64,000 nt of DNA from Orbicella franksi (taxonomy: Eukaryota): the NCBI GenBank assembly GCA_964199315.1, contig OZ116702.1:8556001-8620000 (forward strand), given 5' to 3'. Shown here in pieces: positions 30,534 through 51,741 of the stretch. The notes under the pieces are model-generated. The model saw only the letters and a program-made list of their open reading frames with translations, did not search any database and was not told the origin of the DNA. Position 1 is the stretch's first letter. Every line of letters starts with the position of its first letter. The position numbers and the translations under genes were made by a program.

Positions 30534-33500
30534 ATGGCTCGCAGGATAATACGTAATCTTTTTATCCTCTTTATCTTCCGATGGCTACCGCTAGCGGAAG
30601 CATCTCATTTTCGGCATGGGATGATCATGTGGGCTCCTACAGACTCCTACAGTAACACGGTAAGAGCAGATTATTTCTTCACAGCAGCGAATTGCTCAAC
30701 CGCATAAGTTCAAAGCACTCTCCGCATCGTTGTGGTAGGAGGGGTTTTCTACCACCATACACGCTGTTGTTGTTCAAATATTTATCCTTACTTTTGACTT
30801 GAGGTATTTATTTAAGTTTTGAAACAGTCGCTACATAAACTGATTATTTCTGAGTGTTTCGTACACGAAATTGGCCACTGCTCTTGCGCATATTTCCCAG
30901 AACTACTTGCGAGCTTATTTTTTACTCCGTCTTCTGACTTCCTCCATTCCGCCTTAAATAAATAATTGTTATAGTGCGACATTTCATGCCGTTCGCCCAC
31001 CTGGGGGGGGGGGTACTCCCAGAAAAATTGGGTGGGGGTGTGCGGCCCGCTTCCCAAAAGCCTAAACGGAGTTAGAATTTCAGTGAGCGACATTTGCAAG
31101 AATCTGTGTGGTTGGATTAAATTCAATCAGCAAGGAGCCGAGAACATTCAAACATTTAATTCTATTTCAATCATTTCAATAGAATTTCAAAGACAGTATG
31201 TATTAATTGGTGTTTTTGGTGTTAACATATTTGTTTCTTTAACGTGCATAACTAATAACTATCACTATAAAAGTTCTGCATTTCACATTCTGAACATACT
31301 AATTGCTTATAACATGGAACCGAGTTTAAGGCCCCGTCCGCACGTATCCGGAGATTTTTGAATCCGCAACTTTTTCTTTCCGGATTCGGCTTCCGTCCAC
31401 TCGCATCCGGCGAATTCGGCAGCGAATCCGGATAGAAAAAATTGCGGATTCAAAAATATCCGGATACTTGTGGACAGGGCCTAAGTTTAAGATCTAAAAC
31501 TTCTTCAGGCAATTGACAATATTAACGCGTCATTAAATCAGCTGACGAAAAGTAACATCATGTTTAGTTTTATTTTAATTCCCCAACTAAGTTAGTTATA
31601 AATTAATTGAATAGTTCAATGCACGAGTTTGAGTAGAAGGAAGCTTGTTGCTGATTTTACAAAGTTAGCCCAGCCGTGATAATCAACCTGAATGAATACT
31701 TTAAGGTACACCTCGCTGGCTCTCATAAAGATCTTCATAATTCCGTAATTACGCAAATGCATTCTGCGGGATTACTGATTTATTTTATGATCTTTTCTTT
31801 CAATTCGGTGTTCAACATTTATCAGTCCTTTGAAATGCTTCCTTAGCATTAGTAAAGTTATGAGCGTTAACATTGGATCATCAGGGAGGGAAAACTCCTG
31901 CTTTCAGCCAATATAGTACTTTGTGTAAGTTGTGGAAGCTACATTTTAGAAAAAATTAGGTGGACGGCTTTCATGCAAAGCGAGATGTGGCCTGCGTAAG
32001 CTCATAGTGTACCTTAAGATCGCTGTTTTCCTCATCAACAAGAAATGATGTCGTGTAATACTCACATCCGCAAACCCACAAATATACTAGACATGTATGC
32101 ATAGTGCGCTCGGGCTCACACTACTCATTACCGGCATTTTACTGCTGATACGTTCATGAACACTTTGACTACCGTTATACTGACAATAGAGCTATTAATA
32201 ATTGATCCATGGGCGAGTAAATTTGATTGACACTCAAGATAAGATCTTAGTGATTTGCATAGTGTCTTGTGCTGTACATGTGAGCATTTGTTAATCAACT
32301 TTCAGTACATAGCTCACTGTGTCTTACCAACCTTGAATATCATCAAATGTTATCAACTAAAAGTGCACGAGGAATGATGTTTCAACAATCAGTGTCCCTG
32401 CTCAACGGTAAAACTATTACCGGACGGATCAAAAAAGTCGGCTGTAGCAATTTTGCTTGTCATAATTTCTTTTTAACCTGCTTTTATGAGGCTACAGACC
32501 ATTTACACTAAATTACTGACATCAAGGTCAATATGTGGCAGGGAAAATGCATTGACGACTTGATAGTTTCAACGACTATTCGGTCCATGCCAGTTTCCTA
32601 ATGTTACACAGTTTTAAAGTGCCGTGTTATCATTTACGGGATTAGTGTTTTTATTTTCAGAACTAGTCTAAAAATGTTGGAAATCGTTTGAAAATTCAAG
32701 AGATTTTTGCGTGTTTTAAAAGCAGTTCCTTTCTATCGTCTAAGCTTTATTGCTGTCAACGACTAATTTCTTTTCAGGTACGTTTCAACTTCCGTTTGGC
32801 TTGGCGGAGGTCATATGGATCCAACTTCTGTGACCAGAATACAATAAACCAAGGTAGTCTTCTTGGTGGAGGTTCATGGACAGCAAGCTGCACGAATGCT
32901 TCCAATCCAAATTGTTTGTCCTCGATAACGGTCGGTAGCGCTAACTACCGTTGTACCGACTTTAGTACAAGCGAAGATTGGACCATGGACGAAAATAACT
33001 TCACTTATGCCTTTCCTCCCGCCGGCGAGATATGGACTGTGAGGTGTGTTGCTTTGTGTAGAGACGGTTTAAATCACTCATTTTTGTAATAAACAAATGG
33101 ATAAATTGTGACAATTTTTTAGCTATTCAGACTTGTAATACAGATTTGATGCTACGCGTTAACGGTTCCAAGGTTACCGCACTAGATCAGATGCAAGCCC
33201 TCGAATGTCCGTTTCCGGCTTAAAAGGTTTGACTAAACTGATTTTCGCTTATAATGAAAGATTTCCTTGCAAATATCATATCCTAGAACAGTCCACTTTC
33301 GCAGAGTTCGAACGTAAAAATTCAAGACCACTTCCGGTCCACGTGATCAAATGTGGCCTTCAAATTTGTACACACTAAAGAGTTTAAGGCGAGTACGTGC
33401 AAGAAGTTTGTAAAATCACGTCAATGAAACACGAGCAATGGTAACCCAATCACAAGGTGATAAACTAGTTAATAACAATTATTAAATTATTTATGCTTAA

Positions 33501-51500: not shown

Positions 51501-51741
51501 CGTGTTCACTTGTTTGATATCCACAGATTCTGGCCACGGCCAACAAACTGCTCTGATTGGTGGCGTGGCAGGAGTTGGTGTATTTGGGCTGCTTGCAGTT
51601 ATAGCCCTGGCAGTTTTATGTGTCAAGTTTCGCATGGCGAAAAGGTTTATGCATGGTAAAGAACCCGTAGACCTGAACGCTACCCAAAACGAGCACATGG
51701 GGAAAACGAACCTTGGCGTCTCCGAGTTGGACTCGTTTTAG
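30534..51741 (+). CDS. Uromodulin-like ZP-domain type I membrane protein with Sib-like N-terminus, Ig-like domains and 2 cbEGF (1003 aa); join(30534..30659,32778..33043,34185..34458,36344..36630,37072..37224,37845..37888,39584..39684,40886..41210,41867..41899,42697..42732,43578..43748,44207..44329,47850..48200,48945..49170,49587..49739,50490..50617,51527..51741)
   Basis: 17 GT-AG exons with consistent phases, summing to 3012 nt. Signal peptide then [13 protein letters not shown]; [11 protein letters not shown]; SCCWISL; cbEGF DINEC...[12 protein letters not shown] and DTDEC...[12 protein letters not shown]; ZP-N/ZP-C cysteines; RKKR furin site; [26 protein letters not shown]. In-frame alternative acceptors are possible at 34194 and 43653. 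Confidence 0.88.
31330..31481. mobile_element. PIF/Harbinger-type MITE
   Basis: Ends ggccccgtccgcacgtatccgg / ccggatacttgtggacagggcc; TAA target on both sides. Confidence 0.75.
32087..32330 (+). repeat. Intron-1 segment homologous to the second half of each upstream array unit
   Basis: ctagacatgtatgcatagtgcgct...tactgctgatacgttcatgaacact...gagcatttgttaatcaactttc is shared with the units at 26650-30330. Confidence 0.85.
34530..34927. mobile_element. Kolobok-like non-autonomous DNA element
   Basis: TTAA on both sides; ends aaggacactgtcac / gtgacagtgttcct. Confidence 0.7.
38563..38741. mobile_element. Palindromic MITE
   Basis: TIR aataggccactttcgatat / atatcgaaagtggcctatt. Confidence 0.75.
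39003..39185. mobile_element. Palindromic MITE (related copy at about 35365-35535)
   Basis: Arms aaattgacgtcagtttttcatgcgtctgtcc / ggacagacacgtgaaaaactgacgtcaattt. Confidence 0.75.
42383..42577. mobile_element. Palindromic MITE-like repeat (family of 21441-21640)
   Basis: Arms aatagcctccatt...tgctcggatatt / aatatccgagca...aatggaggctatt. Confidence 0.7.
43145..43432. mobile_element. PIF/Harbinger-type MITE
   Basis: Ends gggcgcttt / aaagcgccc with TAA target duplication. Confidence 0.75.
45865..47690. mobile_element. Decayed Penelope-like composite (direct and inverted terminal pieces with hammerhead-like cores) hosting a nested foldback element
   Basis: Direct repeat gacgaaa..gc.gtccactgttgcgatcctgcttta at about 45930 and 47565. 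45865-45910 is the inverse of about 47210-47252. Confidence 0.45.
46023..47172. mobile_element. Foldback-type DNA element with ~210-bp modular TIRs, TGT...ACA ends and 6-bp TSD
   Basis: TIRs built from aaatgtaata subrepeats (46023 to about 46235 / about 46960 to 47172); GGGGTG at 46017-46022 and 47173-47178. Confidence 0.85.
50665..50812. mobile_element. PIF/Harbinger-type MITE
   Basis: Ends ggcccagttgttcaa / ttgaacaactgggcc; CAG target duplication. Confidence 0.75.

What the first reader, a model, noticed from the sequence alone, without database searches (positions are those of the whole stretch)
30534..51741. Mosaic surface protein joining microbial-type adhesin modules to a metazoan EGF-ZP polymerisation module
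Seen: a mature N-terminus [12 protein letters not shown] followed by FRLAWRR, CTDFS-EDW, CCWI and INSSP motifs, then Ig-like segments, two cbEGF, ZP, furin site and TM. From knowledge: a SHFRxGxIxW start is typical of Dictyostelium Sib (integrin-beta-like) adhesins and some bacterial surface proteins. The segment SIKFDRVIKKP...YIRL...[10 protein letters not shown]...WQF fits the bacterial SbsA/Big_5 Ig pattern. ZP modules polymerise after furin-type release. Inference: a possibly uncharacterised coral family that displays a microbe-type adhesive head on ZP filaments (mucus, skeletal matrix, gamete coat or symbiont interface).
Basis: partly seen in the sequence, partly recalled or inferred. Interest (0 to 1): 0.7.

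Follow-up and report, generated by a model that had tools for sequence, protein, structure and literature searches.

The report
Coral ZP filament protein, Sib-type head
This is an intact, spliced coral gene for a membrane protein that joins a roughly 500-residue adhesin-like head (the kind first named in Dictyostelium Sib adhesins, plus a bacterial-type Big_5 Ig domain) to a zona-pellucida polymerisation module. It belongs to a large, unstudied family that also occurs in sea anemones, molluscs and echinoderms, so it is not a coral-only oddity.

Summary
One + strand gene (30534-51741) encodes a 1003-aa protein in 17 GT-AG exons: signal peptide, four-domain beta head, two cbEGF, ZP-N/ZP-C, RKKR furin site, EHP-like strand, TM and a short tail.

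Both recalled similarities hold.
- **Sib head:** close relatives pass Pfam SIBA-E_N (PF24907). A confident model of a 71%-identical relative has all five Dictyostelium Sib proteins as its best Swiss-Prot matches (E 3e-22 to 4e-14, about 380 residues collinear). Generic Ig chains score TM 0.14.
- **Big_5:** domain 4 matches Big_5/SbsA-Ig clusters (TM 0.76-0.81, rmsd about 2 A), and three relatives pass the Pfam cut-off at that position.

The interpretation needs trimming. The head is not coral-specific and not a recent microbial import. It is conserved in sponge, Nematostella, molluscs, echinoderms and a crustacean, and sits on ZP tails in Nematostella, a clam and echinoderms.

This genome has at least 11 paralogues. 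Public annotation already calls relatives 'integrin beta-like protein'. I found no paper on the head-ZP combination.

Polymerisation and ligand binding are inferred, not shown. The scan had separately noted the upstream repeats and the split EGF in this window.

The parts
30534..30659 (+). Exon 1: ATG, 23-aa signal peptide (30534-30602), start of mature protein [12 protein letters not shown]
   Evidence: donor GT at 30660
32778..33043 (+). Exon 2: core of head domain 1 (FRLAWRR, Cys-rich insert, [10 protein letters not shown])
   Evidence: (143 relatives, best E 2.9e-35)
34185..34458 (+). Exon 3: end of domain 1 (CCWI), INSSP, invariant EDPDGD motif, first half of head domain 2
   Evidence: invariant D-x-D-x-D columns; at least 11 copies in own genome
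36344..36630 (+). Exon 4: rest of head domain 2 and start of Ig-like domain 3
37072..37224 (+). Exon 5: Ig-like domain 3
   Evidence: generic Ig fold, Z about 9
37845..37888 (+).
   Evidence: RNA joint 37888->39584 GT..AG in runs X1 and X5
39584..39684 (+). Exon 7: linker and first strand of the Big_5-like domain 4 (SIKFDRV)
40886..41210 (+). Exon 8: body of Big_5/SbsA-type Ig domain 4 (to about 41149) and a short Cys-rich EGF-like stub
41867..41899 (+). Exon 9: micro-exon, start of cbEGF 1 (DINECE)
   Evidence: RNA joint 41899->42697 in X5
42697..42732 (+). Exon 10: 36-nt micro-exon, part of the 41-residue loop inside cbEGF 1
   Evidence: RNA joints 41899->42697 and 42732->43578, GT..AG, run X5; frame kept
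43578..43748 (+). Exon 11: rest of the loop and the Cys-rich body of cbEGF 1 (in-frame alternative acceptor at 43653)
   Evidence: (EGF_CA 33.3 bits)
44207..44329 (+). Exon 12: cbEGF 2
   Evidence: FXa_inhibition 43.8, EGF_CA 27.1 bits
47850..48200 (+). Exon 13: ZP-N (4 Cys) and interdomain linker
   Evidence: PF23344, 61.3 bits, E 1.2e-16
48945..49170 (+). Exon 14: first half of ZP-C, starting with the [10 protein letters not shown] strand
   Evidence: PF00100, 51.8 bits
49587..49739 (+). Exon 15: second half of ZP-C
   Evidence: PF00100, 32.0 bits
50490..50617 (+). Exon 16: last ZP-C cysteines, furin-type site RKKR (50518-50529), EHP-like strand [12 protein letters not shown] (50572-50607)
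   Evidence: (site and GP motif conserved in five relatives)
51527..51741 (+). Exon 17: transmembrane helix (51550-51624), 38-aa cytoplasmic tail, stop at 51739-51741

Best explanation
A single intact gene encodes a type I membrane glycoprotein precursor of 1003 aa.

**Head (residues 24-505), four beta-sandwich domains**
- The first three (about 24-385) are the same collinear unit as the N-terminus of Dictyostelium SibA-E: Pfam SIBA-E_N followed by two Ig-like domains, with an invariant D-x-D-x-D motif that may bind calcium.
- The fourth (387-505) is a Big_5/SbsA-type Ig domain.

**Tail**
- Two calcium-binding EGF domains act as a stalk.
- A type II ZP module follows (4 + 6 Cys), then a conserved furin-type site, an EHP-like strand and a TM anchor.

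**Most likely mechanism (inferred by analogy with uromodulin and other ZP precursors)**
1. The precursor reaches the cell surface.
2. Cleavage at RKKR removes the blocking EHP and the anchor.
3. The ZP modules polymerise into extracellular filaments.
4. The EGF stalk and the Sib-type head project sideways from these as multivalent binding arms.

The target tissue is probably an epidermal apical matrix or mucus layer. That is the weakest step.

The gene is one of at least 11 paralogues in this genome. It belongs to a family present across marine invertebrates in which the same head is combined with different tails.
For: **Gene structure: shown**
- 17 exons, all GT-AG, phases consistent, no internal stop.
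- End-to-end alignment to P0179 (75%), P. verrucosa and A. millepora proteins (about 60%).
- RNA joints 37888->39584, 41899->42697 and 42732->43578.
- P0179's cluster holds 938-973 aa proteins from 3.1-3.3 kb Logan contigs, probably transcripts.

**Tail domains: shown on the window's own exons**
- cbEGF x2, ZP-N, ZP-C.
- RKKR, GP-containing strand and TM.

**Sib head**
- PF24907 is matched by 28 of 40 relatives at E <= 0.1, best 5e-9.
- At least eight pass the 28.1-bit cut-off, among them P0166 (71% identical, 28.6-30.0 bits), P0172, P0196 and P0204.
- Model of P0166:1-545: pLDDT 85.9, pTM 0.76.
- Its top five Swiss-Prot fold matches are SibA-E, query 8-383 against Sib 2-394, TM 0.48-0.55. The next hits score TM 0.14-0.17.

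**Big_5**
- P0109 29.9, P0141 27.6 and P0112 24.7 bits against a cut-off of 23.6.
- These hits map to our residues 382-505.
- Domain model pLDDT 85. Eight of ten Atlas rows are Big_5 or SbsA-Ig clusters, TM 0.76-0.81.

**Family range**.

**Tissue context**: in Pocillopora acuta, 13 of 15 expressed ZP paralogues are up in oral epidermis (PMC13581030).
Against: - The window's own spliced head could not be given to Pfam or to the structure tools, because no reference exists for a spliced protein. Head identity therefore rests on 71-75% identical relatives and on alignment.
- Single exons do not reach PF24907 or Big_5.
- Cleavage, polymerisation, calcium binding and any ligand are inferred. Nothing here tests them.
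- The EGF-to-ZP exon joins (44329->47850 and beyond) were not covered by the one read-laying run allowed.
- Expression is low. Contig depth over the exons is a few-fold, and one polyA raw-read run showed no exon reads.
- The cytoplasmic tail is conserved among paralogues. That could mean a role for the uncleaved membrane form.
- The P. acuta expression data are for ZP paralogues in general, not for this gene.
Confidence: 0.6

Rival explanations
1. It is a resident cell-surface adhesion or receptor protein. The ZP module serves only for dimerisation or ligand binding, as in endoglin or betaglycan. The protein acts while anchored by its TM helix, and no filaments form.
For: - A TM helix plus a 38-aa cytoplasmic tail whose sequence is conserved among paralogues.
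- The Sib proteins that share the head are membrane adhesion receptors (Swiss-Prot names; function from knowledge of the Dictyostelium literature).
Against: - A furin-type R-K/R-K/R-R site and the GP-containing EHP-like strand lie exactly between ZP-C and the TM, and are conserved in all five aligned relatives.
- The 10-Cys ZP-N/ZP-C module is complete.
- The tail has no NPxY or other integrin-like motif.
Confidence: 0.22
2. It is a skeletal organic matrix protein made by calicoblasts, an orthologue or close relative of the ZP domain-containing protein found in all four coral skeletal proteomes.
For: - A ZP domain-containing protein is one of seven proteins shared by four coral skeletal proteomes (PMC7115838).
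- NCBI names fragments of this family 'ZP domain-containing protein-like'.
Against: - The proteins so named that came up are ZP-only proteins of about 350-400 aa, with 37-59% identity to the A. millepora relative's ZP region. The skeletal protein itself was not retrieved.
- In P. acuta most such paralogues are oral-epidermal, not aboral.
- No proteome peptide was matched to this gene.
Confidence: 0.1
3. It is an artefact: two neighbouring genes (a head gene and an EGF-ZP gene) read together, or a decaying pseudogene copy within a tandem family.
For: - Paralogues with a head but no ZP exist (P0196, P0199).
- My first model lacked a conserved Cys strand.
- RNA depth is low.
Against: - The missing strand is a micro-exon that RNA joints confirm.
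- All 16 introns are GT-AG with matching phases and no stop.
- An RNA contig joins exon 9, exon 10 and exon 11, the exons that follow the head.
- The same architecture is collinear in at least six coral species and in 3.1-3.3 kb Logan contigs of a near relative.
Confidence: 0.04
4. The head was recently acquired by corals from a microbe by horizontal transfer and grafted onto a metazoan ZP gene.
For: - Big_5 is mostly a bacterial and phage domain.
- Bacteroidota T9SS proteins resemble the head in shape.
Against: - The head is split by seven introns.
- It is collinear at 28-39% identity in sponge, sea anemone, molluscs, echinoderms and a crustacean.
- A scan of about 186,000 bacterial and archaeal genomes with the most conserved motif found no relative.
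Confidence: 0.02

Closest known systems
Dictyostelium discoideum integrin beta-like proteins SibA-E (Q54KF7 and paralogues)
   Same: - The N-terminal three-domain unit right after the signal peptide: Pfam SIBA-E_N plus two Ig-like domains.
- About 380 residues are collinear and superimposable (E 3e-22, TM 0.54 by query).
- Both are type I membrane proteins.
   Different: - Sib proteins are about 1900 aa. From knowledge, they carry a VWA domain, C-terminal repeats and talin-binding NPxY motifs.
- This protein has none of these. It has Big_5, cbEGF and a ZP module instead.
- Sequence identity is only about 19%.
Uromodulin / GP2 type ZP filament precursors
   Same: - EGF domains upstream of a 10-Cys ZP module.
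- A basic cleavage site followed by a GP-containing hydrophobic strand, then a membrane anchor.
- Coral paralogues even carry the D8C domain.
   Different: - The head is Sib-type rather than EGF-D8C.
- The anchor is a TM helix, not GPI.
- This paralogue has no D8C.
- Polymerisation is not shown.
Coral 'ZP domain-containing protein' of the skeletal organic matrix (UniProt G8HTB6 and its many paralogues)
   Same: A related ZP module. Both belong to the large expansion of coral ZP genes (27 in P. acuta, PMC13581030).
   Different: - The relatives named after it that I retrieved are short, ZP-only proteins.
- Whether any skeletal form carries the Sib head was not established.
Bacterial, phage and fungal Big_5 / SbsA Ig-like domain proteins (PF13205)
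   Same: Domain 4 has this fold (TM 0.76-0.81, rmsd 1.7-2.6 A). Three relatives pass the Pfam cut-off at that position.
   Different: It is a single domain embedded in a metazoan multidomain protein. The window's own exon does not reach the Pfam threshold.
Invertebrate proteins auto-named 'integrin beta-like protein A/B/C', 'DMBT1-like' or 'CSMD3-like' (Mytilus, Mercenaria, Antedon, Holothuria, Nematostella, Oscarella)
   Same: The whole roughly 500-aa head, almost always at the N-terminus, at 28-39% identity.
   Different: The tails differ: Sushi repeats, SRCR + ZP, VWD + teneurin-type EGF, and giant 3600-4000 aa proteins.

Membership tests
Pfam SIBA-E_N (PF24907) | HMM score at or above the gathering cut-off of 28.1 bits | tested here: inconclusive
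   - The domain is split over exons 1-3. Single exons give no hit, and the spliced protein has no reference to hand in.
- Relatives pass: P0166 (71% identical) 28.6-30.0, P0172 29.8, P0196 32.7, P0020 32.6, P0011 32.2, P0204 28.2-30.7 bits.
- P0179 (75% identical, N-truncated) scores 21.4 and P0014 20.0.
Sib-type three-domain head (fold level) | Collinear superposition on the N-terminal ~390 residues of SibA-E, clearly above generic Ig chains | tested here: met
   Tested on the model of P0166:1-545, used as a proxy. SibA-E are the top five hits, E 3.3e-22 to 4.3e-14, TM 0.48-0.55. The next hits score TM 0.14-0.17.
Dictyostelium Sib family (whole protein) | VWA domain in the ectodomain | tested here: not met
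   No VWA hit in any exon or in full-length close relatives.
Dictyostelium Sib family (whole protein) | Cytosolic NPxY motifs (talin binding) | tested here: not met
   The 38-aa tail holds no NPxY.
Pfam Big_5 (PF13205) | HMM score at or above 23.6 bits | tested here: inconclusive
   - The window's exon 8 alone gives no hit at E <= 1.
- Relatives P0109 29.9, P0141 27.6 and P0112 24.7 bits pass. P0134 20.1 and P0204 19.5 do not.
- All these hits map to residues 382-505 of this protein.
Pfam Big_5 (PF13205) | Big_5 / SbsA Ig-like fold | tested here: met
   Domain model of P0166:384-512 (82% identical to exon 8). Eight of ten Atlas rows are Big_5 or SbsA-Ig clusters, TM 0.76-0.81, rmsd 1.7-2.6 A.
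ZP module proteins | ZP-N and ZP-C domains above Pfam cut-offs | tested here: met
   ZP-N 61.3 bits (cut-off 24.7). ZP-C 51.8 and 32.0 bits on its two exons (cut-off 24.6).
ZP module proteins | Conserved cysteines (4 in ZP-N; 6 in a type II ZP-C) | tested here: met
   Cys at 654, 683, 701, 741 and at 819, 840, 877, 882, 891, 895. The type II assignment is from knowledge.
ZP module proteins (polymerising precursors) | Basic cleavage site, then external hydrophobic patch, then membrane anchor | tested here: met
   RKKR 900-903, [12 protein letters not shown] 918-929, TM 941-965. Site and GP motif are conserved in five relatives. Calling the strand an EHP is by resemblance to uromodulin's, from knowledge.
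ZP module proteins (polymerising precursors) | Actual cleavage and filament formation | not testable with these tools
   Needs expression, proteolysis assay and EM.
Calcium-binding EGF (PF07645) | HMM at or above 27 bits and a D-x-D/N-E-C start | tested here: met
   33.3 and 27.1 bits. Starts are DINECE and DTDECS. The first domain carries a 41-residue insert.
Uromodulin/GP2 family | D8C domain and GPI anchor | tested here: not met
   No D8C in this gene's exons. It has a TM helix and cytoplasmic tail instead of a GPI signal. D8C is present in paralogues P0011, P0020 and P0167.
Coral skeletal ZP domain-containing protein (G8HTB6) | Orthology or peptide evidence from skeleton | not tested
   The protein itself was not retrieved. 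Only 'ZP domain-containing protein-like' relatives at 37-59% identity came up.

The most novel reading that the evidence does not exclude
The Sib head (three domains, with Big_5 behind it in animals) is an ancient adhesion cassette. It is shared by Amoebozoa and most marine invertebrate phyla, and possibly descends from or parallels Bacteroidota T9SS surface proteins. Corals have multiplied it and mount it on self-assembling ZP filaments of the epidermal surface matrix or mucus. There it acts as a multivalent, calcium-dependent binder of microbes or substrate, a uromodulin-like trap with a different hook. This would give the uncharacterised N-terminus of the Dictyostelium adhesins its first animal counterparts and a testable ligand-binding role.
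Probability: 0.3. Interest if true: 0.65.

Novelty: new variant of a known kind. Interest (0 to 1): 0.45.

Why it matters
- **ZP filament proteins.** They are understood mainly through vertebrate examples (egg coat, uromodulin, tectorins), where the N-terminal arms decide what the filament binds. Here a different arm sits on the same scaffold: a roughly 500-residue head otherwise known only from the untested N-terminus of Dictyostelium Sib adhesins.
- **Range and expansion.** The family is expanded in reef corals and is also present in anemones, molluscs and echinoderms.
- **Possible functions.** If the heads bind microbes, substrate or matrix, the family is a candidate for mucus barrier function, larval settlement or tissue-skeleton attachment.
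- **Evolutionary point.** The match shows that part of the amoebozoan adhesion receptor has clear animal relatives, which public annotation hints at only through auto-assigned names.
- **Limits.** The gene is one ordinary member of that family, and nothing functional is shown here.

Tried and rejected
- **Pfam on single exons of the head:** no SIBA-E_N or Big_5 hit.
- **PF24907 against the whole own genome in six frames:** nothing. The domain is split by introns, so this says little.
- **First gene model (15 exons):** it lacked a conserved Cys strand and looked like a possible pseudogene with a stop at 39559-39561. I rejected this reading once the micro-exon at 37845-37888 was found and RNA joints confirmed it.
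- **Profiles of the head and of domain 4 against PDB sequences:** no meaningful hit.
- **Foldseek and VIA-align against PDB:** only generic Ig and cadherin chains for the whole head. Domain 3 ties with many Ig-like domains, including the siglec domains of bacterial serine-rich adhesins, at Z about 9. Domain 4 gives V-set Ig at TM about 0.4. No solved structure is a specific relative.
- **Scan of bacterial and archaeal genomes with the CTD[FY]SxxE[DN]W pattern:** no relative.
- **Profile search of the protein database with the head alignment:** only animal proteins. The word index and length window limit both searches, so bacterial relatives are not excluded.
- **The one bacterial hit of the exon 2 search** (Sphingomonas repeat protein P0113, nine partial stretches, E 9.6e-5): judged a repeat or composition match, not a collinear relative.
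- **Retrieving the A. millepora skeletal ZP protein** with a ZP-region query: failed.
- **Literature searches** for 'integrin beta-like protein' with coral or zona pellucida: nothing relevant.
I used relatives P0166 and P0179 instead.
- **No complex-prediction job was run.**

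
Full report
**What is there**

The + strand between 30534 and 51741 holds one gene.

I built the splice model from GT/AG sites and reading phases. I then corrected it against relatives and RNA. The final model has 17 exons, all GT-AG, with no internal stop, and encodes 1003 aa.

- A 44-nt micro-exon (37845-37888) supplies the last strand and a conserved cysteine of the third head domain. 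Without it the gene looked broken.
- Exon 3 begins at 34185.
- The first cbEGF is interrupted by a 41-residue loop encoded by a 36-nt micro-exon (42697-42732) and the 5' part of the exon starting at 43578.

**RNA**

Fourteen RNA runs from several studies hold parts of the stretch. I laid four runs on 37800-43799.
- Contigs of two runs (X1, X5) showed the joint 37888->39584.
- Run X5 showed 41899->42697 and 42732->43578.
- All joints are GT..AG and sit exactly at the modelled sites.

These joints tie the head's last exons to each other and join exons 9-11 of the first EGF.

Depth is low. Intronic contigs show that pre-mRNA or DNA is also present. One polyA raw-read run had no exon reads.

The EGF-to-ZP joins were outside the 6-kb limit of the single call allowed. 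They rest on three things: matching phases; collinear orthologue models in at least six coral species; and 938-973 aa proteins from 3.1-3.3 kb Logan contigs, probably transcripts, of a 75%-identical relative.

**The tail**

On the window's own exons, Pfam gives two calcium-binding EGF domains, ZP-N (61.3 bits) and ZP-C (51.8 and 32.0 bits).
- The ZP module has 4 + 6 cysteines.
- After it come RKKR (900-903), a strand [12 protein letters not shown] with the GP motif, a 25-residue TM helix and a 38-aa tail.
- The basic site and the GP strand are conserved in all five aligned relatives.

From knowledge of uromodulin and the egg-coat proteins, this is the layout of a precursor that is cleaved and then polymerises.

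**The head, first three domains**

No head exon hits Pfam by itself. Exon 2 alone finds 143 relatives in 1.8 billion representatives, and in nearly all full-length ones the match sits right after the signal peptide.

Sequence evidence:
- Those relatives match Pfam PF24907, 'Integrin beta-like protein A-E, N-terminal'.
- 28 of 40 match at E <= 0.1, best 5e-9.
- At least eight are above the 28.1-bit cut-off, including the 71%-identical Oculina protein P0166.

Structure evidence:
- A model of P0166:1-545, built on a 40-sequence alignment, is confident (pLDDT 85.9, pTM 0.76).
- Against Swiss-Prot models its five best matches are the five Dictyostelium Sib proteins.
- E-values run from 3e-22 to 4e-14. 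Residues 8-383 align to Sib 2-394, at rmsd 4.7 A for SibA and SibC.
- Everything below them is a generic Ig chain at TM 0.14-0.17.

**The head, fourth domain**

- Three relatives pass the Big_5 cut-off: 29.9, 27.6 and 24.7 bits against 23.6.
- A model of that domain alone is confident (pLDDT 85).
- In the ESM Atlas it matches almost only Big_5 or 'SbsA Ig-like' clusters, at TM 0.76-0.81 and rmsd 1.7-2.6 A.

No solved structure is a specific relative of any head domain.

**Range of the family**

The whole roughly 500-residue head is collinear at 28-39% identity in:
- a sponge (Oscarella);
- Nematostella;
- bivalves (Mytilus, Mercenaria, Mya, Crassostrea, Pinctada, Sinanodonta);
- echinoderms (Antedon, Anneissia, Holothuria, Acanthaster);
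- a shrimp.

Fold searches add clusters recorded as mostly rotifer.

The tails differ: Sushi repeats, SRCR, VWD with teneurin-type EGF, and giant proteins. Head plus ZP is not a coral invention. It also occurs in:
- Nematostella (P0295);
- the clam Mercenaria (P0121: head, three SRCR, ZP-C);
- an echinoderm Atlas cluster (TM 0.77).

Within corals the same head and EGF-ZP tail are combined with CUB, D8C or F5/8C inserts, or the ZP is missing. In a tree of heads, sequences group by coral lineage rather than by tail type.

This genome has at least 11 copies of exon 3: three within 80 kb around the window, and a cluster of five on another contig.

Bacteroidota proteins with T9SS sorting domains resemble the head in shape (TM 0.45-0.55 over 300-390 residues). 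A language-model search also pointed to a Bacteroidota cluster. Two sequence-based attempts to reach bacterial relatives found none. I treat this as a lead only.

**How it most likely works**

*Shown:* an intact, spliced gene for a secreted type I membrane protein with the stated domains.

*Inferred:*
- furin-type cleavage at RKKR releases the ectodomain and unblocks the ZP module;
- the ZP module polymerises;
- the EGF stalk and the Sib/Big_5 head stick out as repeated binding arms;
- the invariant D-x-D-x-D motif suggests calcium dependence.

*Context:* in Pocillopora acuta, 13 of 15 expressed ZP paralogues are enriched in oral epidermis (PMC13581030). A ZP protein is also a constant component of coral skeletal proteomes (PMC7115838). 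Neither observation is tied to this gene.

The main rival is a non-polymerising membrane receptor. Artefact and horizontal transfer are largely excluded.

**Comparison and novelty**

It is not a Sib protein: it has no VWA and no NPxY. It is not a uromodulin: it has no D8C, and a TM helix instead of GPI. It shares the head with the first and the assembly machinery with the second.

Public annotation already shows PF24907 together with ZP domains on many coral entries, and NCBI auto-names relatives 'integrin beta-like protein'. I found no paper that mentions this head together with ZP domains or corals.

I rate it a new variant of a known kind, validated but one ordinary member of a large family. 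Interest is moderate.

**Limits**

The window's own spliced protein could not be submitted to Pfam or the structure tools. Head assignments are by 71-82% identical proxies and alignment.

Noticed in passing
window 26650-30614, and 24106-24541: A unit of about 630 bp, made of the gene's 5' flank and the first ~80 nt of exon 1 (signal peptide), is repeated head to tail five or six times at 75-79% identity directly upstream of the real exon 1. A separate 80%-identical copy of the whole exon 1 region lies at 24106-24541, and its translation is 81% identical. I did not examine whether any copy serves as an alternative first exon.
   Followed up: partly
window 58935-63650, minus strand: These are the ZP-N, ZP-C, furin-site and TM exons of a tail-to-tail paralogue, 62-84% identical in protein. 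Its head exon 3 lies about 9 kb beyond the window end (own genome C5:8629331-8629594), and a third copy lies at C5:8669028.
   Followed up: partly
window 3038-17013, plus strand: A very long open frame (3735 aa in one ORF at 5806-17013, with further ORFs upstream) carries repeated HATPase-like 'LLQNADDA' motifs and a C-terminal J-domain HPD motif. From knowledge it looks like a sacsin-like chaperone gene. Not tested.
   Followed up: no
window 38400-39200 and 42400-42600: Intronic stretches show summed contig depths in the thousands in RNA runs, with many loose ends and internal joints. They are presumably dispersed repeats or transposon fragments that are transcribed elsewhere in the genome.
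   Followed up: no
window 41867-43748: The first cbEGF is built from three or four exons. The expressed form seen in run X5 keeps a 41-residue loop between the D-I-N-E-C start and the Cys-rich body. An in-frame acceptor at 43653 would remove most of it, but no contig laid used it.
   Followed up: yes
related proteins (alignment A1): In a tree of head domains, coral sequences cluster by lineage (Acropora, pocilloporids, the window's group) and not by tail architecture (CUB, D8C, F5/8C or plain EGF-ZP). This suggests lineage-specific expansion, gene conversion between tandem copies, or repeated tail shuffling.
   Followed up: partly
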